NCBI GenBank assembly: GCA_047495785.1 | Contig: JBLDXI010000003.1 | Location: 3,472,001 to 3,536,000, forward strand | DNA from: Lepidodermella squamata | Lineage: Eukaryota > Animalia > Gastrotricha | Length of the DNA stretch: 64,000 bases | Direction: 5' to 3' | Part shown: positions 6,385-59,050 of the stretch, piece after piece | Layout of the letters: every line of letters begins with the position of its first letter | Numbering within the stretch: position 1 is the stretch's first letter | Notes under the pieces: model-generated | The model's input: only the letters and a program-made list of their open reading frames with translations | What the model was told of the DNA's origin: nothing | Database searches by the model: none | Position numbers and translations under genes: made by a program

Positions 6385-7200
6385 AGTGAATTTATTTATC
6401 TCTATCAGTTCATTATTTAAAATCTTTAATTTTTTTCGCAAAATATTTATCTTATATTAACTATGGTGTTACCATTCTCTGAACTTGTGAATCTGCTAAC
6501 ATATTGTATTGTATTTAAAATTTCGAATGAGATTGGGATGCTGTAGTAACAATAAAATAACATTTTTCTTCAGTTCTGGGTTTTTTCAACTTGAGATAAA
6601 TTCAACTTCAGGAACTTCAGAAATTACTCGCTCGAATCCATACACTTTCCAACCGCTGAAATTGACGTTTCGTCGGTAAAATGTTTCCAAGTTTGGTTGA
6701 ACCCCGAAGCTGCTCTGCGAGATGGGCCCCTGAACCGAAGTTCATTTTTTATTCATTTTGATTTTAATTCATTTTTTGAAAATTCAATTAAATCGGTTAC
6801 ATTGAAGCTCCAGAAGCTTCTAATATCTGCAAATTCGGCGGAACCCTAAGACAGGAAGCCGAAGACAGGAAAGGGGGACCTATAGGATCGCGAATAATTC
6901 TGATTAACAAAAATTCTGATTAATTTTTCAGATTTTATTCAATTCTCACCTCGATTTATAGACTTCGTCTGGCGTTATGTACTGATTTTGACCGAATACA
7001 GAGAATTTTTGAATGGGAAAAAATTAGTTGTAGTAAAATAATCGTGAATTCAAAGGCACGCGATGTTTTGCGGATACAAACGGTGACATGCGACTCGAAG
7101 AACACGATATTTTTCAAAGTCAAACTCTAACACACGTCCACCGTAAAACTGGTTTTAATTTCATTTTTTATATTTCTAGTTCTGTTACACTGTAGTTTTA

Positions 7201-10233: not shown

Positions 10234-10332
10234 CACGTGAAATAATCATGAAAGGTTGCGCAACATCGACTGGAATCAACCTCGCTCAGGTATATAAACC
10301 CGAATCAGCTGCCTGTTTCAATCATCAATCAG
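10234..10332 (+). promoter_or_regulatory. Putative core promoter of B1
   Basis: CACGTG 10234-10239, TTGCGCAACA 10256-10265, TATATAAA 10291-10298, ATCATCAATCAG 10321-10332. The same order is seen upstream of A3 and C. Confidence 0.6.
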
Positions 10333-14952: not shown

Positions 14953-15373
14953 GGCTGATTTACTGGAGATTATCACAATTGGATAACAATACAACACTAA
15001 AACAATTAACAAATAATAGATAATGAATGCCGATTTTTCCTTTCGAGTGCATAAAGAATTGTTGAAAAGACGTAGAACTTCACGCTGCCGGATAATCAAA
15101 TCAAAAGAATGTTTTGATACACTTTTTCAAATTGAAATGAGTGAACATGAAAAAATCGTGAAAAAACGCGCTTGATATAGCGCGTGGCTCTTCCATTGTT
15201 TACAAGAAAACACGATTGGGCGCGCGATTGGACACGTGCTTTGGAAATTTTGCCACGCAACAGGTATTGTGAAAAACATACCGATTGGTCTTTAAATACC
15301 GGCTAAGAATTCAGGAAATTATCAGTCTCCTTCTCTCTTTATTTTAAATAATTTTAAATATTTTCCGAATACC

Positions 15374-16465
15374 ATGAGGATTATTCTCGCAGTAGCTGTC
15401 ATCGCTCTCCTGTCCTCGGCTGGTGAGTTTTCAATCTAGTTCGCTTTCAATCTCGAAACTTGAATTTTCAATCGCCTTTCAGTCCTCGCTGGCGGCTATG
15501 GAAAAGGCAAGGGTGGCAAGAAGGGTGGCAAACAAGCCTCCTTCTCCGCCTCGGTCGACCAACGCGACACCTACGACCGCAAGTCCGCCTCTGCTGAACA
15601 GGAAGACGCTGCCTTCGACTACGCCTCGGCCGATGCTTCGCACAACAAGAAGACCAGCGACAAGCGCAAGCTGATCAAGACCCGATCGGCCAGCCGCGAA
15701 CGCGCCTCGGCTAGCTACGCCTCGGCTGGCAAGCGCGACTCTGCCTACGACCAGAAGAAATCTAAGGCCGGCAGCAAGCGCCACGGCCGCGTTGTCCGCA
15801 AGAGCGACTCGGCTGCCTTCGCCAAGCACGACAACGCCTACGCCGACTCTGGCGCCGCCGCCGCTGCCCAGAAGCACAAGCGCAACAAGAAGCACGGCCG
15901 CGCCGACCACAAGCGCAAGGCTGCTTTCCAGAAGGACCAGGCCCGCGACAAGGCCGGCGAGGTGATCGAGTTCAAGAAGAAGACCTTCGCCGACAAGGGC
16001 CACAACAAGGTCAACAAGTTCAGCTTCGAGTCCGGCTCGCAAGAGTTCGCCAAGGCCGACTCTGACGGCGCCGCCACGACTGCCAGCCGCAAAAAGACCG
16101 CCAAGAAGGCCCACGGCAAGAAGTCCCGCAAGGCCCACTCTGCTGCCTACGCTTCCCGCGACTCGAAGGCCTCGGCCGCCGCTGCCTCGAAGAAGGCGAA
16201 GCGCAACAAGGCCCACCACCGCCGCGCCTCGGCCTCCGTCGCCCGTGACTCGCGCAACGCCCGCGACTACAAGACCAGCAACAAGAAGACCTCCGTCTCC
16301 GACTCTGCCCACACCCGCAAGGCTGGAGCCAAGTATGGCCGCAAACGTGCCTCCGCCTCGGCTGAACGCGCCACCCACGACTTCCGCGGATCTGTCTCTG
16401 GCAGCTATCGCGATGGTGGCTACGGCAAGAAGGGTGGCAAGAAGGGTGGCAAGCACTACTACTAG
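15374..16465 (+). CDS. Family B secreted protein B2 (~343 aa, 2 exons)
   Basis: Exons 15374-15422 and 15483-16465. Signal peptide MRIILAVAVIALLSSAVLA. Mature region near-identical to B1/B3. AATAAA at 16552-16557. Confidence 0.9.
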
Positions 16466-26700: not shown

Positions 26701-29700
26701 GCCTTGAATTTCCTAACTCGGTGCTTTTTGACCGGCTTTGGAGCTGCCTTTGGCTTGTACTCGGCTGACTGGGAGGCAGATCGAGAGATCGAAGCTGGTT
26801 TCTTAGGAGCTACAGGACGCTTCGGTTTCCAATCCTGTTTCTTCACCGGCTTTTTATTTTTGGGCCTGCTAGATTTTGATGAAGCAGATTCTGACAGCTT
26901 CTTCAATTCAGGTCTCTTCGGCGCCGGCCTACGTTTGACTGGTCTATAAACAACCAAATCTGAGATTTTAAAATTCAAAAATATCTATCGCTTACCTCTC
27001 GTGGAATTTCGGAGGCTTCGGTTCGGACTTCGAGTCGCCTGATCCAGATGAAGCTGACGGCTTCTTGAACTGCTTCTTCGCCGGCTTTTTAGGCTTGGGC
27101 TCTGATTTCGACTTCGAAGAGACTGACTTGCGGAATTTCCTCGGAACCTGTTTCTTCACTGGCCGCTTCTTGGTATCAGGCTTCTTCTGTTTCGGCTTTG
27201 ATTCCACAGAACTTTCCGAGCGGGAAACTGGTCTCGGGGCATGCTTAGGCGGACTATAAAGCACATAGGAAATTTCTTTTAGCGTCAAAAATATTTCACA
27301 AATTTCCTAATACTTACCTCCTCTTTTTTGGCGGAGCTGAAATCGATTTCTTTGGAACAGGCTTTCGTTCACGGCGTTTCATGGCTGGTCGCTTGAACTT
27401 AGGCTCATCCGAGTTCGAAGAGATCGGTTTCTTAACGCGATGCTTCCTCTCCGGTTTCTTCGCCTTAGGCTTCGGCTTACGATCCGCTGATTTCGAATTG
27501 GAACTGTTCGATCGAGAAACTGGCTTAGGTTGCCTAAAATGCCTAGAGTAATGCAGAACAAATTGTATTTAATAGGAAATAAACTGCTGCTTCACACCTC
27601 TTTCGCTGCTTTTCAGGTGCCGTAGTCGGCTTTCGCGGAGCCGGTTTGACCGGTTTCTCTGATTTGGATTCAGATTCCTCGGAACTCTTTGACCGCTTCA
27701 CAATCGGCTTCCTCACGCGATGCTTTTTCGCCGGCTTTTTCGCCTTAGGCTTCGGCTTACGATCCGTTGATTTCGAACTCTCGGATCGAGATACCGGCTT
27801 AGGTTGACGCTTTGGTGAACTTTGAATCAAAAAAAGAAAAAGACATAAATTTCAATGAAAGACATTATAAAAGCTAATTATGATTATTAGAAACCAAATT
27901 ATTCAGTTATTATTTGGAATTTCTATAATCCGAACTTTAGAAAATTGTTCAAATGAATTTTTAAAATTAAAATAAAATCACCCACGTCTTTTCCTGTTTC
28001 TTATGTTCGAAAATTGGTCTCCGCGGCGACTTTCCATGCTGTTTCTTCGCCGGTTTCTCAGTCTTCGAATCGGAGTTTCCAGATTCCTCCGAGCTCTTTG
28101 AAGGCTTAGGTACCGGTTTCCGTTGTACGGGCTTTTTAATCGGCCTTTTAGCCTTTGGCTTCGGCTTGCGATCAGCGGATTTCGAATTCGAACTGGCCGA
28201 TATGGAAATTGGCTTTGGTTTCGGCTTTGGCTTACTGAAAACGCAAAAATCGAGGTTAACAGAAATGCAAGTGATGCAGAAAAATACAAAAATAACCTCT
28301 TCCGCTGCTGCTTATGCTTGGGTTTACGATGTTTCTTGGCTGGTTCAGACTTGGAGGCTGAGTTTTTAGATTCCTCCGAACTCTTAGAAGGCTTCGGCAA
28401 CGGTTTTCGTTGAACGTGCTTCTTCGCTGGCATTTTCGTCTTAGGCTTAGGCTTGCGTTCAGCCGATTTCGATTGCGAACTGACCGATCGAGAAACTGGC
28501 TTCGGTTGTCGCTTCGGTGCACTTGAGACAAATACAAATTTAATTAATGTTCTATAATTGAAAAATATTCCATATTACCTCTTTCGCCGCATCGTAGGTT
28601 CCGAAGCTTGTTTTGGCGGGGCCGGCGGTGCTGGGCGTTGATGGTGCTTCTTGGCCGGTTTCTCCGACTTCGAATCGGATTCAGAGCTTTTTGACCGCTT
28701 CGCAATTGGTTTCTTTACGCGATGCTTCTTCGCCGGCTTTTTCGCTTTTGGCTTGCGTTCAGCCGATTTCGATTTCGAACTGACTGATCGAGAAACTGGC
28801 TTCGGTTTTCGCTTCGGTACACTAGAGACAAGCATTTAATGAGGTTCCACAATTGAAAAAATTAGCTTCAATCGATTTCACCTCTTTCGCCGCATCGTAG
28901 GTTCCGAAGCTTGTTTTGGCGGTGCCGGCGGGATCGGGCCATGTTGGTGCTTCTTGACCGGTTTCTCAGACTTTGAATCGGATTTTGAGCTCTTTGACCG
29001 CTTCGCAATCGGGGTCTTTACGCGATGCTTCTTCGCCGGCTTTTTCACCTTTGGCTTGGGCTTACGATCCGCCGATTTTGAAGTGGAGCTGTCTGATCGA
29101 GAAACTGGCTTCGGTTGAGGCTTTGGCGCCCTTCAAATTTGAAAATAAAATGGATGCATAAAATTCCTGAACTAAAGCAAGAAAAGTGCCAACTAGTCAA
29201 TATAGGTCTTTCGCACCTCTTTTGCTGCTTCGGTTTTCGCTGGACCGGCTTTTGCGGCTTGGCCGGTTTCTCCGACTTGGATTCCGATTCCTCGGAACTC
29301 TTTGGCCGCTTCACAATCGGTTTCCTAACGCGATGCTTTTTCGCCGGTTTGCGTTCAGATTTCGACTCGGAACTTGCTGACTTGGCTTTACGTTTGGGCG
29401 AGCTGTATCAATTAATGATTTAGTCCGTATTGGCAACGGATTTTATGCTATGGTTACCTTTTCTTCGGCTTTTTAGTCTCAACCTCAGGCTTTTTGGCAG
29501 CAGGTTTCTTTTCGCGATTTTTCTTTTCCGGCCCTTTTGACTTGGGTTTCGAGTCCCCAGATTTCGACGACGCCGATTCTTCAGACCTTTTCTCAGCTGA
29601 TTCACGAAAAAGATGCTTTTTGGCTTGTGGTTTACGAAAAAGCTGCTTCTTCGGTTTCGGCTTCGGCCTGTTATCCGCCGACTTCGAGTCAGACTTTGAC

Positions 29701-32700
29701 GCGACTGGGCGTTTAACGGGCCGTTTAGGTTTTGGGCTGTGCTTGCGTTTCTTCGGTCTGTAAACACGGAAATCAGATTTGAATTTCTCAAATTTTCGAA
29801 CACAACTTTATCTACCTTTCTGGGCGCTTCGAAGCTGATTTCTCAGACACGGGTTTCTTCTTCCGATGTTGTTTTGCAGGCTTTTTCTTTTCAACCGATT
29901 TTGACGAAACCGATTTTTCGGACCGCTTCGGCTTCTTAACTCGATGCTTCTTCGGCTTTGGTTTCGGCTTGTCTTCAGACGATTTCGAGGCAGATTTCTT
30001 CGACGGTTTCACGTGGACACGTTTAGCAGGCCGATGTGGTCGCTTTCGTTGTTTCGGCTTGATCGGCCTGTATAACAATTTAGCATTTAGAATTCAATAT
30101 GAAATAAATTATAATTTAAAGACTTTGTGCCAAGTGGACACCCTAAACTTATAGGATACCAGTACTAACTTTGAGGCTTAGAGATTTTCCCATTTTTTCG
30201 CAATATTAAGCGAATTTCGAGCTATTAGGGCCAGTTTACGAGCTATACTTCAGCCTGTAGAGCCGATATCGATTTCAATTATCGATTTTACAAATCAGTG
30301 ATTTTGCAAACTTTACAAACCTAAAATCCGAGGGCGTCGGTGCAGGAGTATCAAGAAGCTAAAATTTGGCGTTGGAACCTCGCGTAAAACTCATTTTCAA
30401 ATTCATTCATTGCGTTTTTCGGGAAAATGATCTTCGAAATATTGCAAAAAAATTCAAAATAAATTGCACCAAAATATCAAATAAATTTGAGGTTTAATCA
30501 CTCGCCATTTCGCAAAATTCTCAATTTCCCAGGAAAATGAAAGATTATTACCTTGATTCTTTCGAGCTATCCGATTTCGATTTTTTCGAAGCAGATTTCT
30601 TCGTGAGGACCTTTTTGACTGGTTTCTTATTTTTACCAGATTTTGACCCGCTCGATTTTTTCGGGACCGGCTTCTTCACACGATGCTTTTTCCCATGCTT
30701 CACAGGACGTTTGTTCTTCGACTTCGATTCAGATTTTGCCGGTTTCGGACTGGGCTTCTTACCCGGGTGTTTCCGAGGCTTGCGTGGGACGAATTCCGAC
30801 TTGGACTGCCTCTTCTTCTCGTAGCCGTGCTCTTCGAAATAACGACGAGCCTTGTGAATATCCGATAGATCCGACATACTGGCCGAAAACGACTTGCGAT
30901 GATCAGTCGGCTTCTTCTTCAAGCCGCGCTTCTTGAAGTCCTTTCGAGCCCGGGTGATGTCAGACTTATCCGACAAACTGGCCGAGTAAGGTCGATTAGG
31001 GTGTTCGGTCTTCTTCCTCAGGCCTTTCGCCTTAAAATCAGCCTTAGCCCGGTTGATATCGGACAAGTCGGATAAACTCGCCGAGTACGGCCGGTTGTCC
31101 TTTTCCGGCTTCTTCTTCAAACCCTTGTCCTTGAAGTCCTTCTTCGCCCGGTTGATGTCCGAAATGTCAGACAGGCTGGCCGAGTAAGGCCGATCCTGTT
31201 TCTCCGGCTTCTTCAACAAACCCTTCCGCCTGAAGTAGTCCTTCGCCTTGATAACATCAGACTGGTCGGATAAACTGTCGGAAAATTTATCAGGGTGCTG
31301 GTTCGAATCCTTATTCTTCTTAATTCCATGCTTTTTGAAGTGCTTCCTAGCTCGCTCGAGGTCGTCAACATTCCTCAAGCCGATGGAAAAGGATCGAGAA
31401 TCAGCCGAACCTTGGAACCTGCCGCGGTAGCCGAACTTCGAAAAGTGCTTCCTGGCTCGTTGGACATCGCTTTCATCGGACAAACTCGTCGAAAAATCGA
31501 TCAAGTGCTTCCGCTTTGATCCGTAACCTCGTTTGCGTTGCGGCTTCTTTTCACGCTTGACTGGTTTCTTGTTTTTCTTCTCAATAATGACGTAATCACT
31601 CGATTTGGTTGCTCGCTTCTTCGAAGGGTGTTTCTTGGCAGGAACTCGCTTTTTCGGCTTCGGCTCAGAGCTAACTGGCACTGGGGGTCTGGGCCGATAT
31701 GGGCTCAGAGCGGAACGGCCTTTCTTCGGCGTTTTAACCGGCTTCGACTTGGCCGAGAATGATTTACGCTTCGTCTGTTTCGGAGCAGCCGTCTTCTTCG
31801 AGTTTTTGAAGGCCGGGTGGTCGAAATTAACAGGTTTTTCCTGTTCAACTTCTTCCGGAGAATCAGGCTTTGAAGCTGGTTCCGCGTTAAGAACAGCCTT
31901 CAATACAATTTTCGGACTTTCGATGCGCTTGGCTGGTTTCTTCGCCTTCGGCTTCGGCTTCTCTCGTCGCGATTTCTCGTGGAATTTTTTAGCCCGTCGA
32001 CGATCAGAAGCGTCGGATAGGCTCTCGGAATACGGCTCCCCAGACCGTTCGGGTCTCTTGCGCAAACCTTGGCGTTTGAAGCTCTCCCGGGCTCGTTCGA
32101 TATCAGACGCGTCTGACAAACTGGCCGAGATACGCTCGTTAGGCCGGCCTCGTCGCTTTTTCAGCCCTGTTCGCTTGAAATGAAGCTTAGCCCGTTCGAC
32201 GTCAGATTTATCCGACAGACTGGCTGAGAATGACCTGCGGTTGTTTCGCTCGGGTTTCTTCCTCAAGTTAATTTTCCGGAAATGTCGCTTCGCCTTGATC
32301 ACGTCAGACCGGTCCGACAGGCTGTCGGAGAATTTCTTCGAATCGGATTCTCGGTTCTTCTTCACGCCGTGCGTTCGGAAATGCTTCCGAGCCCGGGCCA
32401 GGTCGGCTCGGTGGGTCAGACCGGGTGAAAATGAACGAGAATCCCCGGCGAACTGAACACGGCCATTGCGCTTGTGGGGAACGCGGCGGAAGTGACTTTT
32501 CGCCATTTTAATGTCAGATTCGTCGGAGAGGCTGATCGAGAATGGAATGGCTTGGTTGGTTCCTTTGTAAGTAGGCCGCGAGGCGTGTTTTTTCGAGACG
32601 GTCTTCTTCTCGGCAATAGCGGGCCGACCAACCGGCTTGCGAGATTTACGCTCCGATGCGCTGTTTGAACCTGATATAAATTAAAAAATTAGGTTAAACT

Positions 32701-36982: not shown

Positions 36983-37040
36983 TGTTCGTTTTATATATTT
37001 ATTTCTGTATTTAACAGTCTCTATACTCAGTTAACCTACC

Positions 37041-38810
37041 ATGCGTATCCTGCTCCCGATCGCCATTGCGGCGTTCCTGTTCGGTAAATATTGAAAATTT
37101 CATGTTTTCAACATTTTCAATCGTTGAAATTGTTATTTCGTTTCAGTTGCCAGTAATGCCCAGCAAAAACAACAGCAGCAGCAGCAAATCCAGCTGCCTA
37201 ATTTCGACCTCCCGAAGCAGCAAGACAACGCGAAGAACAACCAAGGCGAGAGCAAGAAGGCTGTCGCCAAGAAGCCCCAACCGAAGCACTCTGAATCGCA
37301 CGAGTCACCCGAATCGAAGGAATCGCCCGAATCCAAGGAGTCTCCCGAGTCCAAGGAGTCGCAATCTTCCCAGTCTGCGCCCAAGAAGCGCGGCGGCAAG
37401 AAGGCTGTCGGCAAGAAGCACGGCAAGAAGTTCGCCAGCAGCGACTCGTACGTGCCCCGTCGTCGCCACCACCAGAAGCGCCGGTACTCGAGCGGCTCTG
37501 ACTCGTCTGCCTCGAGGAAGCACGGCAAGAAACATGGCAAGAAGCACGGCAAGAAGCACGGCAAGAAGAACCGTAAGAGCAGCGACAGCAACAGCTACTC
37601 GTACGGCTCCGGCAGCGATGCCCGCGACTTCAAGGCCATCGAGAAGCTGATCAAGCTGCGCAACCAAGGCCCAGTCCAGCCCGAGAACCTGCAGGAGAAG
37701 ACCGAGCTCAAGGCCAAGGAAAGCACCAAGCTCGACGCCAAGGAGAAGGAGTTCAACGCCGAGAACCAGGCTGTCGACATCAACGCCGCGACCAAGAACA
37801 AGAAGAGCAACTTCGAGGAGACCAAGGCATCCGCGAAGGCCAAGTCGTCGCACGAGGGCCTCGACATCGCCGTCAGCGCCACTGTTGAGGACAAGAAGTC
37901 GAAGAAGGACGCGAAGAAGTCGTGGAAGAAGAAGGCCAGCCACCAGCGCAAGAACTACAACAAGCACTCGCGGTCTGACAAGGCGTCTGCCCAAGCCAAG
38001 TCCAGGAACGAAAAGGCCAAGATCCGCGGCCGTGGCAAGTTCAACAAGCACGGCAAGTTCAACCAGGAGTATGACAACGACGCCGGCACTGACAACAAGC
38101 GCGATACTGACGCCATCACGTTCACCCGCAACACCGACAAGGGCCAGGACAAGACTTGGACCAAGAGCAAGGGCAAGACCAACACCGAGTTCGGCGAAGG
38201 CGGTGCTCTGAGCGGTTCGATCGAGACGAAGGCGTCCAAGAAGAGCGCCAAGGCGAACAAGAAGGGCAAGAGCAAGGGCACCAAGAAGCGCTACTCGTCT
38301 GCCTCGGAGTACGCCAGCTACTCGTCGAACCAGCACGACAAGAAGCGGAAGCAGAAGGCCCGCCTCAGCGCCGACGTCAAGTACAGCAAGGGTAAGGATT
38401 ACGCCAGCGCCAGCTACGAGAACAAGAAGAAGGCGAAGGAGAGCGGCTCGACCAAGAAGTCGAAGAAGGCCAACAAGGCGAAGATCGCGGCGAAGGAAAA
38501 GTCCGTCTCTTACCACTCGGATTCGCAGGTTTCGTACAGCAACAAGAAGTTCGCCGCCCCGGCCTCGAGCGCTTCGCCGGAGCCCAAGAAGCAACCCAAG
38601 AAGAAGCAGCCCAAGAAGCAGCCCAAGAAGGCCGTCACCAAGTCCGAGTCCGAGTCCAAGTCCTGGTCCGACAACAAGTCATCTGCGTCGCCTGAACCGG
38701 TCAAGAAGGGCAAGGGCAAGGGCAAAGGCAAAGGCAAAGGCAAAGGCAAAGGCAAAGGCAAGGGCAAGGGCAAGGGCAAAGGCAAAGCCTTCTACGGCAG
38801 CTACTATTGA
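37041..38810 (+). CDS. Family A secreted basic protein A3 (~568 aa, 2 exons)
   Basis: Exons 37041-37083 and 37147-38810. Signal peptide MRILLPIAIAAFLFVASNA. Near-identical to A2. Long (KG)n tail ending AFYGSYY. AATAAA at 38923-38928. Confidence 0.9.
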
Positions 38811-40857
38811 GTTACGCCCATTCGAACAGTGAAAATTCAGTGATTATTTAAAGTATTCTTTTTTCCGTTATTTGCGCCGCTTATTTTCGTCGCCTGATTT
38901 CGTGATTGCTATCGAAAAATGAAATAAAAATGAAGATTTTGCAATACTGTTGTCTTTTCATTTTCTTCTGCTTCCATAAAAATGCTGATATCTGCTCCAG
39001 TCAGGGTTGTGATCGAAGGTGAAAAGTGAAAAGTGCCTCTCAGTCAGAACTACTCACGAGAAAGGAGGGTGTTCAGCTGAATCATGAACAAAATAAGCTC
39101 AAATTTCGGTGGGAAAGTAAACAACGAAGTTTATTTCTCTTCGATCGATTTCGTTAAATCAGAGAAGGTTCTCTCAAGTTTGTTGATGGAACCTGAAAGA
39201 GAATATTACGGGGAACAAGGTGGTTTTTTTTCGTGATTTTATGATTTTTTCAAAAAATTACTCAAGATGCATTTTAAGGTTTTTGAGCTGGCAAACAAAA
39301 TGGGAAATCGACAGGAATGAAAAGGAAATTGTAACAATTAGCGATGCTGGATCTAAATGCGGTTGTTCGTGAGCTTTCTTTGAGCCCATTAATCTGTTGA
39401 AATGGGTTTTCGAATTCGGAAATAAACCATAACAACTGCTTCGAAGAAAGTTTAATTGAACGACGTTTTTCAGGAAAGTAAATTGGTCTTAAGAGCTATC
39501 GCCTTTTGATACTTGAAGCGAATTAACAATTGACGTTTTCTGATATTTTCTATCAAAAAATGTTTTATCAAGTCATTGGATCTAAATACATATATCATTT
39601 GAACAAAAACGACAAGCAACGCAAGCCTGATCATCCAGCTAAGCGAATTCGAGGCCAAAAGCTGATCCGCTCGAATCTCCTGAACCCCGTCGATTCCCCA
39701 CCCCCTGCCCACGGCTTCAGCTATACTATGCAAGTTCGACTTTCGGCTAGCAATCTGTCTGTTCTGGTCCGCGGCCATCGGTTTTGAACTCAAGCGTAGG
39801 TACCATTAAACAGGGATTAGCATTAAACAAATTAAACGGGGATCACATGTTATTTAGTCATCGCGACCCACCGACTCACCTTAGGGTGAATTTAATCTGT
39901 TATTAGCATACTTGAGAGGGCGCCCAGAGGGTGTCAGCGAGCGGTGTAAGATGGTTGAGAGTTTGGACCGTGCGGTGATTAAACGAGAGAGCGGCCTTCA
40001 TCAACACCCAAAGCTATAATTATAAGGGTGATTTAGCGGCGATTTATCAGGTGCAGCCTTTATTCGGCTATTACGGCTCAAAGTTAATAGGTAAGCATCA
40101 CTGCAATTGTTTCTGCGAATCTGCGAAATTTTTCTCACATGCCGGGACTATCATCCGCCTACGATAGGCGGAGAAACGCAGCTAAGCGCCGTGCTCATCA
40201 GGGAGGAGAATCTTCCGAGGGCCAGAAGCGAGGCCGTGGCCGACCTCGCACTGTTCGAGGTGAGACCCAGGCAGTCGTCGAGTCAAAAACCCCGCCCACT
40301 CCGCCTCTATCTACTTCTCCCTGCCCTGACTCGTGTCGATCAACATCAGCAGCTTCTTACCTTTCATTAATTCAGGTACCTATATATTTTTAAATTGAAG
40401 AACTTTTAGCATTTAACACGAATATAATGTTAGTCCCAGAAAAGCGACTGCGGCGTCGTGACAGAAACTGTACCAGTTGCCAATATTGCTGTGCAAACTG
40501 ACCCGCCTACGTCGAGACCGATCATAACTCGAACGATTTCTACTCAGACGGAAGACCACAATGTTATGGCCGCGACTCAGCAGTCTCTACTATTCCTCCA
40601 TGATTAACAAGATTTTGACTGATTTCCTTTAAACAGGCGTCGATTTTCCTATACCTAAGCCTTGTCTCGTTGATTCAATAAATTTGTATGAAAAAAATAC
40701 CTACGTTGCTATGAGAATCGGACATGAAAATGATGACGAACCAAAAAAATCAAGGGTGTTCAAATTTGCATTTTATTCTGATGTTTGCTTCAATCCATTC
40801 GATGTATCACATCTCACAGTTCGCGTAATAAATAATAAATTCACTAATCACATCGAG

Positions 40858-41973
40858 TTAATAGTAGTGCTTGCCACCCTTCTTGCCTCCCTTCTTGCCT
40901 CCCTTCTTGCCGCCCTTCTTGCCGTAGCCACCATCGCGATAGCTGCCAGAGACTGATGCAGCGAAGTCGTGGGTGGCGCGTTCAGCCGAGGCGGAGGCGC
41001 GTTTGCGGCTGTGCTTGGCGCCAGCCTTGCGGGTGTGAGCAGAGTCGGAGACGGAGGTCTTCTTGTTGCTGGTCTTGTAGTCGCGGGCGTTGTGAGAAGC
41101 GCGAGCAACGGAAGCCGAGGCGCGGCGGTGGTGGGCCTTGTTGCGCTTCGCCTTCTTCGAGGCAGCGGCAGCCGAGGCCTTCGAGTCGCGGGAAGCGTAG
41201 TCGGCAGAGTGGGCCTTGCGGGACTTCTTGCCGTGGGCCTTCTTGGCGGTCTTTTTGCGGCTGGCAGTGGTGGCAGCACCGTCAGAATCGGCCTTGGCGA
41301 ACTCTTGCGAGCCGGACTCGAAGCTGAACTTGTTGACCTTGTTGTGGCCCTTGTCGGTGAAGGTCTTCTTCTTGAACTCGATCACCTCGCCGGCCTTGTC
41401 GCGGGCCTGGTCCTTCTGGAAAGCAGCCTTGCGCTTGTGGTCGGCACGGCCGTGCTTCTTGTTGCGCTTGTGCTTCTGGGCAGCGGCGGCGGCGCCAGAG
41501 TCGGCGTAGGCGTTGTCGTGCTTGGCGAAGGCAGCCGAGTCGCTCTTGCGGACAACGCGGCCGTGGCGCTTGCTACCGGCCTTGGACTTCTTCTGGTCGT
41601 AGGCGGAGTCGCGCTTGCCAGCCGAGGCGTAGCTGGCCGAGGCACGTTCGGCGCTGGCCGATCGGGTCTTGATCAGCTTGCGCTTGTCGCTGGTCTTCTT
41701 GTTGTGGGAAGCATCGGCCGAGGCGTAGTCGAATGCAGCGTCTTCTTGCTCAGCAGAGGCGGACTTGCGGTCGTAGGTGTCGCGTTGGTCGACCGAGGCG
41801 GAGAAGGAGGCTTGTTTGCCACCCTTCTTGCCACCCTTGCCTTTTCCATAGCCGCCGGCAAGGACTGAAAAGCGATTGAATATTCAAGTTTCGAGATTGA
41901 AAGAAAACTAGTTTGAAAACTCACCAGCCGAGGACAGGAGAGCGATAACAGCAACTGCGAGAATAATCCTCAT
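40858..41973 (-). CDS. Family B secreted protein B3 (~351 aa, 2 exons)
   Basis: Exons 41973-41925 and 41864-40858. Signal exon, intron and upstream ~200 bp closely match B2. Ends (KKGG)4KHYY. Confidence 0.9.
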
Positions 41974-42918
41974 GTTATTCGGAAAATATATTCAAAATTA
42001 TTTAAAATAAAGAGAGAAGGAGACTGATGATAATTTCCTGAATTCTTAGCCGGTATTTAAAGTAAAATCGGTATGTTTTCACAATACCTGTTACGTGGCA
42101 AATATTTCCCGAGGCGCGTGTTCAATCGCGTGACCAATCCAGTCGCGCCAGAAACAACTTCGCGTAAGCAACGTGGATAGACCACGCGCTTAAAAAAATT
42201 CGATTTTTCAATAATTTTTCCAATAGTGTGATTCGGACTTCGTACTTTGAGCCTTACTTTGAGCAGAGTGAATGTATTGATTAAATTAAACATGTTCGAG
42301 AAATCACAGTCTGAATAATTTAGCAATTGAATCACCTATTTTTCAGTCGATTTAAACTTCATTTTTTTATTTTTTTTTCCCCAGAAATTTTCCAGCAAAA
42401 GCGAGATAGTTGCGGTCGAGAAGAATCGTCATGAGTAATCAGCTGTTTTCGTTACTACAGCACTCAGACCTGACGGCGCCGTATACTATATTGCCAACGT
42501 ATCGCCGTGGATTCTTGCCATATCACCACAATATTATCCATATCAAAAAATGCGCTCGATTGTAAAAAACGTGAGTGTACACAGCCCCGCCCCGAGTTCC
42601 TGGTTTGTTTAGCTCGATAATATGCAAATATTCAACACACACGCGATAACAAGAAACGGGAAATGTACAAAAAACGCGACTTATCATCTCACCTCGTGTT
42701 ACCACCGCGGCTCTTTGCCTAGAAGACACACGTTTGTCGATAAAAAAAACTTGAATAATATCAAATAAAAAACGCCGCGCACTCTAACGAGCTTCGCTGC
42801 CAATAATATTACGGTAATAAAACATCGTAATTTTTTATTGCGCCTAATAAAAAATTACGGCGATGACCAAATATCTGCCTCATTATTATTTTGCAAATAA
42901 TTTATTAATTTATTAATT

Positions 42919-52502: not shown

Positions 52503-53781
52503 TTAGTAAGAATGGTGGTTGCTGGCGGCCTTCTTGCCTTCCTTCTTGCCCTTCTTGCCACCCTTCTTACCGCCCTTCTTGCCACCCTTCTTGCCACCCT
52601 TCTTCGAAGCCTTCTTGCCATGGTAGTCGCTGTTGCTTTCCTTCTTGGAGCTGGCGCTCTTTTCTTTAACGCTGTAAGAGCCTGAGGACTTCTTGCCCTT
52701 CTTGCCGCCCTTCTTGGCAACCTTCTTAGGGGCGCTGGCGCTCTTCTCTTCTTGGGCGCTGGCGGAGAGTGAGGCCTTGAAGTTGTGGGAGGCGTGTTCA
52801 GCCGAGGCGGAGGCGTGCTTCTTGGACTTCTTGGCCGAGGCCTTGCGGGCGTGGGCAGAGTCGGATTCGGAGGTCTTCTTCTGGCTGGCCTTGTAGTCAC
52901 GAGCATTCTGCGAGTCACGGGCGACGGAGACCGAGGCGCGGCGCTTGTGGGCCTTGTTGCGCTTCGCCTTCTTCGAGGCAGCGGCAGCCGAGGCCTTCGA
53001 GTCGCGGGAAGCGTAGGCAGCAGAGTGGGCCTGGCGAGCCTTCTTGCCGCTGGCCTTCTTGCTCTTCTTCTTGTGGGACTTGGCCTTGGCAGCGGCGGCG
53101 GAGTCAGCCTTGGCGAACGATTGCGAGCCGGATTCGTAGCTGAACTTGTTGACCTTGTTGTGGCCCTTGTCGGCGAAGGTCTTCTTCTTGAACTCGATGG
53201 CCTCGCCCTTCTAGTCACGGGCCTGATCCTTGGTGTAGCCGCTCTTGCGCTTGTGGTCAGCACGGCCGTGCTTCTTGCTACGCTTGTGCTTCTGGGCAGC
53301 GGCGGCAGCACCAGAGTTCTTGTAGGAGTTGTCGTGCTTCTGGACGGCGGCCGAGCCACTTTCACGGATCTTGCGACCACGGCGGTGCTTGGCGGCCTTC
53401 GAGGCCTTCTTGTCGTAGGCAGAATCTTGCTTGCCAGCAGACTCGTAGTTGGCAGAGGCGCGTTCAGCGCTGGCCGATCGCTCCTTGATCAGTTTCTTCT
53501 TGTCGCTGGTCTTCTTGTTGTGGGAAGCATCGGCCGAGGCGTAGTCGGCGTAGTTGAATTCGGCTTCAGCAGAGGCGGACTTGCGGTCGTAGGTGTCGCG
53601 CTGGGAAACTGAGGCGGAGAATGAAGCTTCCTTCTTTTCACCACCCTTCTTACCGCCCTTCTTACCACCAGCATAGGCTATATAAGAAAATAATTGAGGA
53701 AAACAATTGGTCGAATTGGGTTCGCAACTTACCAGCAGAAACGAGGAGACCGACGAGTGCGAGTGCGAGAATGACACGCAT
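52503..53781 (-). pseudogene. Divergent family B gene B4 with one in-frame TAG (null allele, recent pseudogene or base error)
   Basis: Exons 53781-53733 and 53677-52503. Signal peptide MRVILALALVGLLVSAAYA. TAG at 53213-53211 where paralogs have AAG (QARD-K). The frame then stays intact to ...KKGGKKGKKEGKKAASNHHSY TAA (407 codons if read through, 171 aa if truncated). Confidence 0.7.
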
Positions 53782-53894
53782 TTTAAAAATGATAAAACTA
53801 AAAACAATTATAAAGAATTTTAAGTAAATATTGCATTTCTTTTATCGAGATTCCATGTCTCAAAATATAACGATTTTCAGGTTTTCTTCGTTCT

Positions 53895-55078
53895 TTAATA
53901 GTGACGGCGACCGTGCTTGAATCCACCGCGCTTGCCGTTGGAGCCAGCCGAGGCGGAGGCGGAGTTCTTGTTGACTGAGGCCGAGGCGAAGTTGCCACGG
54001 CGACCCTTGTGACCGAAGAAGCGACCACCACGGCGGCCATTGCCAGCCGAGGCAGAAGCAGATCGCTTGTTAACCGAGGCAGAGGCGAAGTTACCACGAC
54101 GGCGGCGACCGAAGAATCCGCGCTTGCCGTTGGAGCCAGCAGAGGCGGAGGCGGAGTTCTTGTTGACGGAGGCAGAGGCAAAGTTTCCACCACGGCGACC
54201 ACCATGACGGCGTCCGAAGTGGCCACGACGGCCACGGAAGTTGCCGGCAGAAGCAGAAGCAGAGCGCTTGTTAACCGAAGCCGAGGCGAAGTTGCCGCGA
54301 CGACCACCATGACGGCGGCCGAATCCGTGACCACGACGACCGCGGAAGCTGCCAGCGGAAGCAGAGGCGGAGCGCTTGTTGACCGAGGCAGAGGCGAAGT
54401 TTCCTCCACGGCGGCGACCGTGGCCGAAGTAGCGACCAGCGTGATGGCGACGGCCGAAGCCCTTGTGGCCCCTGCGGCCCTTGTTGGAGCCAGCCGAGGC
54501 GGAGGCGGAGTTCTTGTTGACTGAAGCCGAGGCGAAGTTGCCACCACGACGACCCTTGTGGCCAAAGAAACGGCCATGACGGCGACCACCGTTGCCAGCC
54601 GAGGCAGAAGCAGAGTTCTTGTTAACGGAGGCTGAGGCGAAGTTACCGCGACGGCCCTTGTGGCCGAAGAAGCGACCGCCACGGCGGCCACCATTGCCAG
54701 CTGAAGCAGAGGCGGAATTCTTGTTAACTGAGGCAGAAGCGAAGTTGCCGCGACGGCGACGACCGAAGAATCCGCGCTTGCCACGCTTGTCGCCAGCCGA
54801 GGCGGAAGCCGATTTCTTGTTGACAGAGGCTGAGGCACCGTTTCCACCACGACGACCACCGCGCTTGCCGTGGAAGTTGTGGATCAGACCAGTCTTCTTG
54901 ACGTTGTCGACGCCAGCCGAGGCGGACGCCGATTTCTTGTCAACGGAAGCCGAGGCATCAGCAGAGATGGCGGCTGGAAATCGTGTGAAAAGATAAAATC
55001 GCTGGCGATTACTGAAAAATGTTAGGACTTACCAACGCAATACAGGGCGAGGACTGCTGCTACGAGAGCGATACGCAT
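53895..55078 (-). CDS. Secreted silk-like repeat protein C (~374 aa, 2 exons)
   Basis: Exons 55078-55033 and 54973-53895. Signal peptide MRIALVAAVLALYCVAAISA, then 10 copies of [NF]ASASV[ND]K[NKR]SASASAG separated by Gly/Arg/His/Phe spacers. Ends HGRRHY. Absent from the ORF track because the exon 2 frame has no start codon. Confidence 0.9.
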
Positions 55079-55122
55079 TTTAGTGTAATGAAAAAATATA
55101 TTTAATAAATTATTGAATGAAG

Positions 55123-55253
55123 CCGATTGATGATTTCTCACCGGTTTCCTGCCAGCTTTTAAAGCCGTAGTTGTTTTTGTGCCAAACGTGTTGCGCAATT
55201 CAATAACGATTGAACCAGTCACGAGCTCGGTCTACTTGGGCGCCGCGCACGTG
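55123..55253 (-). promoter_or_regulatory. Putative core promoter of gene C
   Basis: On the minus strand: CACGTG 55253-55248, TTGCGCAACA 55198-55189, TTTAAAA 55163-55157, ATCATCAATCGG 55134-55123. Confidence 0.55.
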
Positions 55254-55453
55254 GACGAAATTTTTCCAAGGTCAAAGAGCTATTTTCATTTTCAATGAAA
55301 AACATTTATTCATTTTAATTTCATTTCACAAACACTGAATGATCCATTTTAAAGAACATCACACTCAAGGTATCTTTTTTTCAAAAATATAATGTTTATT
55401 GTTATAAATTATAAAAAAATGTTATTATTGTTATAATATGGTATCGGTTGCTT

Positions 55454-57159: not shown

Positions 57160-59050
57160 ATGACAGCGGCGGTACAGTCGCAACCTGTTGTGACCCATGC
57201 CTTTCAAGCGGCTGGTCCAACTTTTACGGCACCGGCAACAAATGGAGCATCTAATGCTACGCCGGCTCAAACGACGGCATCGAAGCTCATTTTCTGCGAC
57301 CCATTAAAGGTATGAATGCCAAAAATATATAAAAATTAGTTTATGTTTAAATTAATAATTAAAACTATTATATTTAAAAATTTGAAAATAAAATTTAATT
57401 AATAAAAATTAATAGTTTTAATTATTAATTTGATTTTTAATTAATTTTCTCTATAATTTTATGAATTTTATTATTTTTCAATTTACGACGATTTCAAGTC
57501 TTTCAAAGTTCAATTCAAATTTAACGATTTTTTAGGCCGAAGATGCTGTTGAATTTCTTGAGCAGCGGCTTAATGTTGGGCATGGAGAAACTTTGTTAAT
57601 CTTGGGATGCGGCGGCATTGAAGGTGAAACACCTGGTCTGACCCCGGCTGAACTCGAAGCAAGTCTTGCCAATCTCGGCCAACTTTGCCAAGACCCGCGA
57701 ATTCAGGCTTCTTTCTCGATTCTTCGCGAGCAATCAATGAACGGTGATAAGAAACGAATGCTTGCCCACGTTTTAGTCCGTCGCGAAGTGCCTGAAACTG
57801 ATTTCGCCGAAATTCGAGTCGCCGTAGTTGGCAATGTCGACGCTGGAAAATCAACCCTACTCGGCGTTCTGACCAACAACGAACTGGACGATGGCCGTGG
57901 CAAGGCCCGACTCCGATTACTACGTCACAAGCACGAAATTGAAACCGGGCGAACTTCATCGGTCGGCTATCAAATCATGGGCTTCAACTCGTCGAATGAG
58001 CAAGTTCTCAACAATGACCGGGCAAAAATTTGCGGCGAGTCGGCTAAAGTCATAGAATTCATCGATTTGGCCGGGCATGAGCGCCACCTTAAGACCACTG
58101 TTTTCGGTCTAACGGGTCACATGCCCGATTTCTGCATGTTGATTGTCGGGTCGAACATGGGCTTGGTTGGCATGACTAAGGAACATCTCGGCCTGGCGTT
58201 GGCTCTCAACGTTCCGGTTTTCATCGTTGTCACAAAAATCGACATGTGCCCTGGTAATGTTTTGCAGGAGACGCTTCGAAATTTGCAGCAATTGCTGAAA
58301 TCATCCGCGTGTGGCCGAAAAATGCCGCTGATGGTTCATTCAATTGATGAAGTCCTAGTTGCAGCGGCGAATTTTTCTTCGATGCGAATTTGCCCGGTTT
58401 TCCAAGTTTCGAGCGTGACCGGGTTGAACCTGGACCTTTTGAAGACCTTCCTCAACTTGCTGCCCGCTCGAACTATACCTGACCAAATTGATAACTGCGG
58501 GACTGAATTCTTGGTCAGTGAGACCTATGTGATACCTGGTATTGGTACTGTTGTCTCTGGAATCACTCTGAAGGGTTCAGTCAAGCTGAACGACACCCTC
58601 TTGTTAGGGCCCGATAAACTTGGGAGGTTCGTTCCTGTAGCAATTCGGTCAATTCAGCGACACAAAATGCCGGTTTCCATGGTAACGGCAGGTCAAACGG
58701 CCGCATTTTCCCTGAAGAAGATCAAAAGGTCGCAAGTTCGAAAGGGCATGGTCCTAGTTTCGCCTGATGTCAAGCCAGTTGCCACGTATGAATTCGAAGC
58801 TGAAATTTTGATCCTACATCACCCGACTACGATAACAAATGGCTATCAGGCGGTTGTTCACGTTGGATCGGTTCGGCAAACAGCGACAATTGTCTCGATG
58901 TCGCAGGAGAGTCTTCGAACTGGCGATCGGGCGAATGTCAACTTTCGATTCGTTAAAGCTCCTGAGTACCTAAGATTGGGGTCGAAATTTGTCATTCGTG
59001 AAGGACGAGCAAAAGCTATTGGAACGGTTACCAAAGTAACGCAGAAATAA
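57160..59050 (+). CDS. GTPBP1: GTP-binding protein 1 (translational GTPase, GTPBP1/2 family), ~554 aa, 2 exons
   Basis: Exons 57160-57309 and 57536-59050. Motifs: [80 protein letters not shown]. Confidence 0.93.

What the first reader, a model, noticed from the sequence alone, without database searches (positions are those of the whole stretch)
53895..55078. Hidden silk-like block copolymer: 10 x ASASV-NK-NSASASAG modules with Gly/Arg/His/Phe spacers
Seen: the real frame is not in the ORF track. It alternates a highly conserved ~17-aa module (two Ser-Ala alternating stretches around a polar NK[NRK] centre) with variable spacers such as NGGRRGGRFFGHKGRRG. Synonymous sites vary among repeats while the amino acids are kept, which points to selection on the protein. 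Known: Ser/Ala alternation forms tightly packed beta-sheets in silks, lacewing egg-stalk silk is cross-beta with short strands and polar turns, and RG/aromatic spacers promote phase separation. Inference: each module is a beta-hairpin that stacks into crystallites within a cationic, coacervate-forming matrix.
Basis: partly seen in the sequence, partly recalled or inferred. Interest (0 to 1): 0.85.

Follow-up and report, generated by a model that had tools for sequence, protein, structure and literature searches.

The report
Secreted polycationic Ser-Ala repeat protein gene
A real, spliced and heavily transcribed two-exon gene encodes a 36-kDa secreted, extremely basic protein in which ten identical Ser/Ala modules alternate with Gly/Arg/Phe/His blocks; it has no detectable relatives anywhere and looks like a building block of an undescribed secreted material, but its silk-like behaviour is still only a prediction.

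Summary
On the minus strand, exon 1 (55078-55033) encodes a signal peptide. A 59-nt GT..AG intron follows (55032-54974), then exon 2 (54973-53895). Together they encode 374 aa. The mature protein is about 354 aa, pI 12, with net charge about +78 and no Glu, Pro, Cys, Trp or Gln.

It has exactly ten 15-aa modules, ASASV[N/D]K[K/N/R]SASASAG. Thirteen of the 15 positions are invariant although four-fold synonymous sites are nearly randomised. The spacers fall into three types, and these are also conserved at amino-acid level.

RNA contigs from a public run cover the exons at high depth, stop upstream of the promoter, and contain the predicted splice joint. Codon usage is strongly biased compared with neighbouring genes.

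No homologue was found in Pfam, NCBIfam, PDB sequences, 5.8 billion protein clusters, 1.84 billion representatives or metagenome contigs.

AlphaFold2 drew every module as a beta-hairpin in one of five full-length models. A four-module piece came out disordered.

Best reading (about 0.5): a structural or adhesive component of a secreted material, encoded in a large cluster of polycationic Ser-rich secreted proteins. Rivals are a processed peptide precursor and a disordered polyanion-binding coat protein.

The scan also noted a sister gene with 11 modules 12 kb before this window (s1-379660), which I could not read. The organism was not identified.

The parts
55190..55198 (-). upstream motif TTGCGCAAC (C/EBP/PAR-bZIP-like half-palindrome), about 115 nt before the ATG
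   Evidence: Sequence. The same 10-mer lies at a similar distance upstream of cluster paralogue A. Its function is not tested.
55156..55163 (-). TATA-like box TTTAAAAG
   Evidence: Sequence. RNA depth in run X1 is zero upstream of about 55178 and starts at 55102-55178.
55079..55134 (-). probable start region (ATCATCAATC at 55134-55125, shared with paralogue A) and 5' UTR
   Evidence: An X1 contig is collinear with the genome over 55039-55128. The motif is shared with paralogue A downstream of its TATA box. The exact start site is inferred.
55033..55078 (-). exon 1: ATG plus 15 codons plus 1 nt, the hydrophobic signal peptide (MRIALVAAVLALYCV..)
   Evidence: Translation. The cleavage site after ..AAISA is inferred from the small-x-small rule; no predictor was run.
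54974..55032 (-). 59-nt phase-1 intron, GTAAGT...TTCCAG
   Evidence: Sequence. The joint 54973->55033 appears in an RNA contig of run X1 at depth 386.
53895..54973 (-). exon 2: the rest of the CDS (358 codons) plus stop TAA at 53897-53895; the protein ends ..GRRHY
   Evidence: Translation. X1 word depth is about 4,900-73,000. 20 of 22 listed between-run differences are synonymous third-position changes, and all listed indels are multiples of 3.
54912..54956 (-). module 1 (ASASVDKKSASASAG)
54792..54836 (-). module 2 (central NKK)
54696..54740 (-). module 3 (central NKN)
54594..54638 (-). module 4 (central NKN)
54489..54533 (-). module 5 (central NKN)
54351..54395 (-). module 6 (central NKR), preceded by the longest spacer (31 aa)
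54243..54287 (-). module 7 (central NKR)
54135..54179 (-). module 8 (central NKN)
54042..54086 (-). module 9 (central NKR)
53943..53987 (-). module 10 (central NKN), followed by the 16-aa tail ending HY
53853..53894 (-). short 3' UTR (approximate)
   Evidence: Contigs of three runs end at 53853/53854, and X1 depth falls to about 120 in 53793-53869. No AATAAA is present. The end point is inferred. The ATG of the next gene lies only 114 nt after the stop.

Best explanation
This is a protein-coding gene for an abundant secreted structural protein. After the signal peptide is removed, it leaves a polycation of about 36.5 kDa (82 Lys+Arg against 4 Asp, 16 His, 26 Phe). In it, ten identical amphipathic Ser/Ala modules are each held between Gly/Arg/Phe/His blocks.

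The proposed mechanism is inferred, not shown. In the secretory cell and on release, the chain is disordered and highly soluble because of its charge. On meeting a polyanion (phosphorylated or acidic partners from the same gene cluster, sulphated glycans, or a mineral or substrate surface), the Arg/Phe/His blocks would drive condensation through charge and cation-pi contacts. The concentrated Ser/Ala modules would then pair into short beta-strands. One face of each strand would be Ala/Val and the other Ser, and these would act as physical cross-links. The terminal His-Tyr may add covalent or metal cross-links.

The gene belongs to a cluster of at least a dozen polycationic, Ser-rich secreted proteins, and probably contributes to the same extracellular material (glue, coat, capsule, tube or cuticle layer).
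For: Shown:
- The reading frame is open and spliced.
- The splice joint, exon-limited coverage and high depth appear in RNA contigs.
- Codon bias typical of very highly expressed genes: Arg CGC/CGT 55 of 57, Lys AAG 23 of 25, Asn AAC 29 of 32, Phe TTC 24 of 26. The neighbouring GTPBP1-like, lectin and spectrin ORFs are unbiased.
- Strict purifying selection acts on every module residue, and on the spacers within each type.
- Between-run differences are 20 of 22 synonymous.
- There is an N-terminal hydrophobic leader.
- The composition is pI 12, net charge about +78, with no Glu, Pro or Cys.
- Five of ten modules carry KK or KR at their own centre, which fits a turn position that tolerates N, K or R but not a liberated peptide.
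- The genomic context is several other secreted Lys/Arg- and Ser-rich genes. They share a signal-peptide exon followed by a short phase-1 intron and have His/Tyr C-termini.

Suggestive only:
- One AlphaFold2 model has all ten modules as hairpins.
- Published materials with the same logic exist. Barnacle GSrCP cement alternates small-residue 'silk-homologous' domains with Arg/Lys-rich domains (PMC5099703). Lacewing cross-beta silk is Ser/Gly/Ala-rich with a positive net charge (PMC5485732). Caddisfly H-fibroin has (SX)n blocks with Gly-rich spacers (PMC13267644).
Against: - There is no information on tissue, on the material, or on the protein itself.
- The beta-hairpin prediction is not robust. 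Four of five full-length models are poor, and the four-module piece is disordered.
- Ala and Ser have low intrinsic strand propensity, and the putative strands are only 5-6 residues long.
- A net charge of +78 opposes self-assembly unless a polyanion is present, and none has been identified.
- Conservation this strict (no Ser/Ala swap in 110 positions) is more typical of specific recognition or bioactive peptides than of bulk materials.
- Every module is bracketed by dibasic sites, most of them preceded by Gly. This is also what a peptide precursor looks like.
- Homology to the neighbouring family is not demonstrable (BLASTP E = 1.3).
Confidence: 0.5

Rival explanations
1. Polyprotein precursor. 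The secreted chain is cut by furin or prohormone convertases at its 30 dibasic runs and trimmed, releasing many copies of short peptides. These would be cationic Gly/Arg/Phe/His peptides with antimicrobial or signalling activity, and/or amidated Ser/Ala peptides of about 21 aa.
For: There is a signal peptide. There are 30 runs of two or more Lys/Arg, 23 of them directly preceded by Gly (the classical amidation signal), and 5 R-x-[KR]-R sites. A hypothetical cut gives repeated identical products, for example four 21-aa Ser/Ala peptides and three copies of a 9-aa GGRFFGHKG fragment. Both modules and spacer types are conserved residue by residue despite saturated synonymous sites, as in multi-copy peptide precursors. 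Atlas feature search lists an apidaecin-type cluster among weak look-alikes (score 0.57).
Against: Gly and Arg are 31% and 27% of the spacers, so 'G-RR' arises from composition alone. Five of ten modules contain KK or KR at their centre, so the best-conserved unit would itself be cut in half in some copies only. There are no acidic pro-regions to neutralise the cationic peptides (4 Asp, 0 Glu). Many predicted products are 2-6 residues long. The very strong codon bias and high RNA depth, and a location inside a cluster of large Lys/Ser-rich secreted proteins, fit bulk secretion better than a neuropeptide. An antimicrobial role is less easily excluded.
Confidence: 0.2
2. A permanently disordered secreted polycation with no beta-structure. 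It would act as a soluble counter-ion, coat or condensing agent for a polyanionic partner (mucus or sulphated glycans, phosphoproteins, chitin-associated matrix, egg or sperm coats). The Ser/Ala modules would serve as conserved sites for O-glycosylation or phosphorylation, or as docking sites for a specific partner.
For: The four-module AlphaFold2 run and four of five full-length models are disordered. GRAVY is -1.08, pI is 12, and there are no hydrophobic residues beyond Phe, Val and Ala. Strict conservation of every Ser could reflect modification or recognition sites. Cluster neighbours carry S-x-E/S-x-D motifs and acidic stretches that could be the partners.
Against: The strict alternation, with an Ala/Val face and a Ser face and a polar 3-residue centre, is the pattern expected for paired strands rather than for a modification site. 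The target itself has no S-x-E site and no N-glycosylation sequon. One AlphaFold2 model did give a confident hairpin stack.
Confidence: 0.25
3. Not a functional gene: a non-coding or decaying tandem repeat that happens to be open in one frame.
For: It was found by no gene caller. It is absent from 15 billion predicted proteins. It is low-complexity, and two other frames are also open for more than 130 codons.
Against: A spliced RNA contig and exon-limited coverage exist. Variation has a strict codon-position pattern in one frame only. All indels are in frame. There is optimal-codon bias, a signal peptide, and a TATA-type promoter. Absence from protein databases is explained by the lack of any ATG, GTG or TTG codon in exon 2.
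Confidence: 0.03

Closest known systems
[quoted passage not shown]
   Same: Both are secreted proteins of moderate size. Short conserved low-complexity domains of small uncharged residues (Gly/Ala/Ser/Thr) alternate with domains rich in Arg and Lys. They are proposed to form hydrogen-bonded beta-rich nanofibrils in an adhesive.
   Different: No sequence similarity. The barnacle domains are about 100 residues long and about 60% conserved, whereas these are 15-aa units that are essentially invariant. pI is 6-10 there against 12 here. Here there is no Thr, Glu, Gln or Leu, and Phe/His are prominent.
Lacewing egg-stalk cross-beta silk proteins MalXB1/2 and ChryC1/2, PMC5485732
   Same: Both are Ser/Gly/Ala-rich repetitive cores with a short strand-turn period (16 residues there, a 15-aa two-strand module here) and a pronounced positive net charge. 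Both assemble, or would assemble, without a spinneret.
   Different: The lacewing cores are continuous 16-residue periodic arrays. Here modules are separated by 16-31-aa Arg/Gly/Phe/His spacers, giving a period of 31-46 aa. The lacewing proteins end in a Cys/Asp motif, whereas this mature protein has no Cys and ends His-Tyr. No homology.
Caddisfly H-fibroin, PMC13267644, PMC10387566, PMC4929942
   Same: Both are block structures with (Ser-X)n strands followed by Gly-rich, basic spacers. In caddisfly, the (SX)n blocks form serial beta-domains that act as reversible cross-links.
   Different: The caddisfly motif is [(SX)nE]m with phosphoserines bridged by Ca2+. This protein has no Glu and no S-x-E site at all. 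The gene is 1.1 kb rather than over 20 kb. No homology.
Suckerins and histidine-rich beak proteins of squid, bioRxiv 10.1101/2020.08.10.244673, PMC6884462
   Same: The block-copolymer logic is shared: short beta-forming modules confined between Gly/aromatic-rich disordered modules. Gly-His-Gly-aromatic motifs (GHGF, GHFG, GHKG here) resemble the GHGxY repeats that drive coacervation of beak proteins.
   Different: Suckerin beta modules are Ala/Thr/His-rich and the disordered modules are Gly/Tyr/Leu-rich. Here the beta candidates are pure Ser/Ala, the aromatic residue is Phe, and Arg dominates the spacers. No homology.
Multi-copy secreted peptide precursors (e.g. apidaecin-type or FMRFamide-type polyproteins)
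   Same: Both have a signal peptide, tandem near-identical units conserved at amino-acid level with divergent synonymous sites, and dibasic sites preceded by Gly between units.
   Different: Dibasic pairs also occur inside half of the conserved units. There are no acidic spacers. Basic residues make up 23% of the chain rather than marking discrete sites. Expression and genomic context are those of bulk secreted proteins.

Membership tests
Silk fibroins/spidroins (homologous families) | Sequence homology of terminal domains or repeats to a known fibroin or spidroin family | tested here: not met
   Pfam gave 0 families. There were no hits in 5.8 billion clusters, in 1.84 billion representatives by exhaustive phmmer, or in PDB sequences.
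Silk in the functional sense | Protein stored in a gland and spun or drawn into an extracorporeal semicrystalline fibre | not testable with these tools
   Organism, tissue and material are unknown. The runs are coded.
Silk in the functional sense | Repetitive blocks that form beta-sheet crystallites | tested here: inconclusive
   AlphaFold2 gave hairpins for all 10 modules in 1 of 5 full-length models (pLDDT 65, pTM 0.64). The 4-module piece was disordered. No fold match was found.
Lacewing cross-beta silk (MalXB/ChryC) | Continuous repetitive core with 16-residue periodicity | tested here: not met
   The units are 31-46 aa, made of a 15-aa module plus a 16-31-aa spacer. Tandem Repeats Finder periods are 93-108 nt.
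Lacewing cross-beta silk (MalXB/ChryC) | C-terminal Cys/Asp motif | tested here: not met
   The mature protein has no Cys and ends ..GRRHY. The family feature is taken from PMC5485732.
Caddisfly H-fibroin | [(SX)nE]m blocks (phosphorylatable, Glu-terminated) followed by Gly-rich spacers | tested here: not met
   (SX)n blocks and Gly-rich spacers are present, but there are 0 Glu and 0 S-x-E sites. The family feature is taken from PMC13267644.
Barnacle GSrCP cement proteins | Alternation of small-residue low-complexity domains with Arg/Lys-rich domains | tested here: met
   Modules contain only A, S, V, N, K, G, D and R. Spacers are 31% Gly, 27% Arg and 6% Lys. The family feature is taken from PMC5099703. 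This is an architectural resemblance only.
Barnacle GSrCP cement proteins | Sequence homology to cp19k/Aa43 domains | tested here: not met
   No hits in any sequence search.
Multi-copy peptide precursor | Signal peptide plus repeated conserved peptides flanked by dibasic cleavage sites (Gly before the site if amidated) | tested here: met
   There are 30 dibasic runs, 23 preceded by Gly, and every module is bracketed. The test is weakened because Gly and Arg dominate the spacer composition.
Multi-copy peptide precursor | Product peptides themselves free of cleavage sites; neutralising or acidic spacers | tested here: not met
   KK or KR lies in the centre of 5 of 10 modules. Asp+Glu total 4 of 354 residues.
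Neighbouring 'SASAE / KKGGKK..HYY' secreted family of the same cluster (paralogues A-D) | Detectable sequence similarity | tested here: not met
   BLASTP E = 1.3, aligning only 16 N-terminal residues. No nucleotide match outside the gene itself.
Neighbouring 'SASAE / KKGGKK..HYY' secreted family of the same cluster (paralogues A-D) | Shared gene plan: MR[IV] leader exon of 46-49 nt, phase-1 intron of 55-59 nt, one large exon, basic C-terminus ending in His-Tyr | tested here: met
   The splice joint of neighbour D was also seen in RNA. This plan is common among secreted proteins, so it is weak evidence of kinship.

The most novel reading that the evidence does not exclude
The gene, together with the 11-module sister gene noted 12 kb before the window, founds a new class of animal structural protein. 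It would be a 'cationic cross-beta block copolymer' whose sequence-perfect Ser/Ala hairpins are nano-confined between Arg/Phe/His coacervating blocks. It would be made by a lineage with no annotated close relatives, as part of a previously undescribed secreted material encoded by a cluster spanning more than 100 kb.
Probability: 0.25. Interest if true: 0.8.

Novelty: new variant of a known kind. Interest (0 to 1): 0.55.

Why it matters
If the protein is a structural or adhesive component, it offers a compact natural design of 36 kDa built from only about ten residue types. In it, the beta-forming block and the cationic aromatic 'sticker' block are each fixed by selection at single-residue resolution. 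That is rare among materials proteins, whose repeats are usually kept alike by gene conversion rather than by selection on each copy. Here the saturated synonymous sites show which residues matter.

The protein is small enough to express, mutate module by module and test. It could therefore show how charge-driven condensation is coupled to beta-sheet locking in wet adhesives and fibres.

The case also shows how such genes escape annotation. Exon 2 has no start-like codon and the leader lies on a separate 46-nt exon, so the gene is missing from collections of 15 billion predicted proteins.

Tried and rejected
1. Sequence homology searches all came back empty.
   - The exact look-up of exon 2 was not in the collection.
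   - The word-indexed search of 5.8 billion clusters found nothing, either for the target or for cluster paralogue C.
   - Exhaustive phmmer over 1.84 billion representatives gave no hit at E <= 0.001.
   - Pfam, NCBIfam and PDB sequences up to E = 10 gave nothing.
   - In JGI metagenome contigs, 325 pattern matches were found but none was confirmed.
   - HMMER's composition correction may hide distant low-complexity kin. Close orthologues would still have scored.

2. The ESM Atlas feature search gave only weak arthropod low-complexity look-alikes (scores <= 0.73). I rejected these as evidence.

3. Fold searches with the one good model found no match. Foldseek against PDB gave TM <= 0.18, with beta-helix proteins at E > 0.2. 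AFDB clusters gave TM <= 0.29.

4. Attempts to identify the organism failed.
   - The neighbouring GTPBP1-like exon finds only 64-67% identical proteins, from fishes, birds and Priapulus.
   - Rfam found nothing in the window.
   - Two exact look-ups of neighbouring ORFs were not on record.
   - Run names are coded.
   - The lineage therefore has no annotated close relative, and I could not name it.

5. Literature searches for the peptide motifs found nothing relevant.

6. A protamine-like or nucleic-acid-binding nuclear protein was rejected because of the signal peptide. An antifreeze or ice-binding solenoid was considered and dropped because there is no Thr array and no fold support.

7. The other open frames over the repeat are mirror-frame artefacts. 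They are the minus frame at 53798-54859 and the plus frames at 54009-54524 and 54592-54996. All variation among repeats and among runs follows the codon phase of the reported frame.
Full report
**What is there**

The region 53895-55078 holds a two-exon gene on the minus strand.
- Exon 1 (55078-55033) reads MRIALVAAVLALYCV plus one base.
- A 59-nt intron (55032-54974) runs GTAAGT...TTCCAG.
- Exon 2 (54973-53895) continues in phase to a TAA stop at 53897-53895.

The spliced CDS is 1125 nt and encodes 374 aa. The true frame of exon 2 contains no ATG, GTG or TTG codon. This is why the mechanical ORF list omits it and instead shows three mirror-frame artefacts.

**Anatomy of the protein**

After a typical leader (probable cleavage after ..AAISA, inferred), the mature chain has about 354 aa and 36.5 kDa. 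Its pI is 12.0 and its GRAVY is -1.08. It has 82 Lys+Arg against 4 Asp, plus 16 His, 26 Phe and 2 Tyr. It has no Glu, Pro, Cys, Trp or Gln.

A pattern search finds exactly ten copies of the 15-aa module ASASV[N/D]K[K/N/R]SASASAG, which together make up 150 residues. They are separated by spacers of 16-31 aa whose composition is Gly 31%, Arg 27%, Phe 13%, Asn 9%, His 8% and Lys 6%. Modules 3-10 are each preceded by ..RRG(G)NF. The chain ends ..GRRHY.

There is no N-glycosylation sequon and no S-x-E site.

**Is it more than chance, and is it coding?**

Among the ten modules, 13 of 15 amino-acid positions are invariant. The 12 four-fold columns (Ala, Ser as TCN, Val, Gly) never differ at codon positions 1 and 2. 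Their third positions differ in 49% of pairwise comparisons, against 63.5% expected for random draws from the pooled bases. Overall there are 273 synonymous and 40 non-synonymous pairwise codon differences. All the non-synonymous ones lie at module positions 6 and 8.

The copies are therefore old, are not being homogenised at DNA level, and are held by purifying selection on the protein.

The spacers are not freely variable either. They fall into three types:
- NGGRRGGRFFGHKGRRGNF-like
- SNGKRGFFGRRRRGNF-like
- [S/N]FRGRRGH(G)FGRRHGGRRG(G)NF-like

Within a type, amino acids are kept despite many synonymous changes. For example, spacers 4 and 10 differ by 6 synonymous and 0 amino-acid changes.

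**Transcription and splicing**

One search found seven public runs holding this stretch, and four were laid on 53100-55400. Findings in the RNA-type run X1:
- Word depth is about 4,900-73,000 over exon 2. This is inflated by multi-mapping among repeats.
- Depth is about 750-800 over exon 1 and the 5' UTR.
- Depth is zero upstream of about 55178.
- Depth is about 120-300 in the 114-nt gap to the next gene.
- A contig joins 54973 to 55033, skipping 59 nt with CT..AC on the plus strand. This is exactly the predicted GT..AG intron.
- The intron of the downstream neighbour (53677->53733) is seen as well.

Run X7 also behaves as RNA. It shows no depth in flanks or introns, and it shows this gene well above its neighbour. 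Runs of a second, related organism (X2) carry the gene at lower identity.

Of the 22 best-supported differences between runs and the window inside the CDS, 20 are synonymous third-position transitions. The other two together change the variable centre residue of one module. All listed indels are multiples of three. One caveat applies: some of these 'differences' may come from other repeat copies, or from a sister gene outside the window.

Codon usage independently indicates very high expression. Arg is CGC/CGT in 55 of 57 codons, Lys is AAG in 23 of 25, Asn is AAC in 29 of 32, and Phe is TTC in 24 of 26. The neighbouring GTPBP1-like, C-type-lectin and spectrin-repeat ORFs are unbiased.

A TATA-like box lies at 55163-55156, about 25-30 nt upstream of an ATCATCAATC element that is shared with a cluster paralogue. 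A shared TTGCGCAAC motif lies further upstream.

**Context**

The gene sits at the edge of a cluster of secreted, Lys/Arg- and Ser-rich low-complexity genes.

*The downstream neighbour and its paralogues.* Immediately downstream, with its ATG 114 nt after the stop, is gene D (53780-52503). D is one of four paralogues. The others are A at 10388-11477 (+), B at 15374-16465 (+) and C at 41973-40858 (-). All four have an MR[IV] leader exon, a phase-1 intron of about 55 nt, bodies rich in K/S/A with SASAE motifs, and KKGGKK..HY(Y) tails.

*Further Lys-rich genes.* Two more end in (KG)n..HGY or ..GSYY (13152-14927 on the minus strand, 37452-38810 on the plus strand). Others carry a 35-aa SASLSDxSD.. 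module.

*Kinship with the target.* The target shares the gene plan, the His-Tyr end, and a 16-residue N-terminal resemblance with the A-D family. However, BLASTP is not significant (E = 1.3), so kinship is only suggested.

*Earlier scan notes.* These describe the cluster (s1-379572, s1-379554) and a second gene with 11 such modules and Gly/Arg/His/Phe blocks, 12 kb before the window start (s1-379660). I could not read that DNA.

*Flanking genes.* These are ordinary: Sushi-repeat genes, a GTPBP1-like GTPase, a C-type lectin and a spectrin-repeat protein.

**Relatives and organism**

No relative was found by any route: Pfam, NCBIfam, PDB sequences, the 5.8-billion-cluster index, an exhaustive phmmer over 1.84 billion representatives, metagenome contigs, or the literature by motif.

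The GTPBP1-like exon next door is at most 64-67% identical to anything in the collection. Its best hits are fishes, birds and Priapulus. The genome therefore comes from an animal lineage without annotated close relatives, and I could not name it. The genome is gene-dense, with introns of 55-59 nt.

**Structure prediction**

AlphaFold2 without an alignment gave one model (mean pLDDT 65, pTM 0.64) in which every module is a hairpin of two six-residue strands with a three-residue turn at the N/D-K-x centre. Module blocks have pLDDT of about 73-86 and spacers are below 50. The other four models were poor, at 50, 37, 35 and 32.

A 135-aa four-module piece, given an alignment of the other module quartets, was predicted fully disordered (pLDDT 39.5, pTM 0.11). 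The stacked model matches no solved or predicted fold.

The hairpin idea is therefore compatible with the sequence. Alternation would give an Ala/Val face and a Ser face, and the variable position sits in the turn. It is not robustly predicted, though, and the free monomer is probably disordered.

**Interpretation**

The facts that must be explained are:
- secretion
- very high expression
- extreme positive charge with no acidic residues
- Phe/His/Arg/Gly 'sticker' blocks
- residue-perfect conservation of short Ser/Ala alternations
- a genomic neighbourhood of other polycationic Ser-rich secreted proteins, some with acidic or phosphorylatable stretches

The best fit (about 0.5) is a structural or adhesive component of a secreted material. 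It would condense with a polyanion through its Arg/Phe/His blocks and then lock through its Ser/Ala modules. Only the gene-level steps are shown. Condensation, beta-locking and cross-linking are inferred by analogy with four systems:
- barnacle GSrCP cement (PMC5099703)
- lacewing cross-beta silk (PMC5485732)
- caddisfly H-fibroin (PMC13267644, PMC4929942)
- squid suckerins and beak proteins (10.1101/2020.08.10.244673, PMC6884462)

Membership in any of these families fails on homology and on at least one defining feature. There is no (SX)nE motif, no 16-residue continuous period, no Cys tail, and no Pro/Tyr modules.

The main rivals are two. One is a dibasic-processed peptide precursor (about 0.2). 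The Gly-dibasic brackets favour it. Against it are KK or KR inside half of the modules, the lack of acidic spacers and the bulk-secretion context. The other is a permanently disordered polyanion-binding coat protein whose Ser/Ala modules are modification or docking sites (about 0.25). A non-coding artefact is effectively excluded.

**Verdict**

I class the gene as a new variant of a known kind, namely secreted block-copolymer materials proteins, with no homologues. Interest is moderate to high (0.55). It would rise if the tissue and material were identified and beta-structure were demonstrated.

Noticed in passing
window 53211-53213 (minus strand), in gene D 53780-52503: The downstream neighbour has an in-frame TAG where its three paralogues A, B and C have AAG (Lys). 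The frame stays open for another 235 codons to ..NHHSY. RNA depth continues past the stop. This could be a nonsense allele, a truncated product with a long 3' UTR, or stop-codon readthrough.
   Followed up: partly
window 13167-16453 and 37039-42139: An inverted segmental duplication carries two secreted-protein genes each: 13167-14954 matches 38774-37039 at 91% and 15214-16453 matches 42139-40894 at 94%. A third copy of the SASAE/KKGGKK gene lies at 10475-11507, at 95%.
   Followed up: partly
window 3996-9441 and 23702-32506: A module of about 35 aa recurs many times in several very basic Ser/Lys/Arg/Pro-rich ORFs. Its consensus is roughly [FY]SASLSDxSD[IV]xxA[RK]xxF[KR]xxG. No Pfam match was found. 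The S-x-x-D/S-x-D patterns suggest phosphorylation sites.
   Followed up: no
window 52503-52529, 53895-53903, 11448-11477, 16436-16465, 40858-40887, 13152-13160, 38800-38810: Unrelated-looking secreted proteins of the cluster all end in a basic Gly/Lys (or Arg) tail followed by His and Tyr..GKHYY..NHHSY..GRRHY..KKHGY and ..GSYY. This could be a shared cross-linking or sorting tag.
   Followed up: partly
window 53781-53894: Only 114 nt separate the stop of the target from the ATG of gene D on the same strand. The gap has no AATAAA and has a TTTTTAG just before the short leader of D. The two genes are not strictly co-expressed: run X7 shows the target well above D.
   Followed up: no
window 55190-55198 and about 10256-10265: The motif TTGCGCAAC(A) occurs about 120-130 nt upstream of the ATG of both the target and paralogue A. 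Both also share ATCATCAATC downstream of a TATA box. This is a possible common regulatory element of the cluster.
   Followed up: no
window 57593-59047: The GTPBP1-like GTPase exon is at most 64-67% identical to any protein in the 5.8-billion-cluster collection. This indicates a lineage without annotated close relatives.
   Followed up: partly
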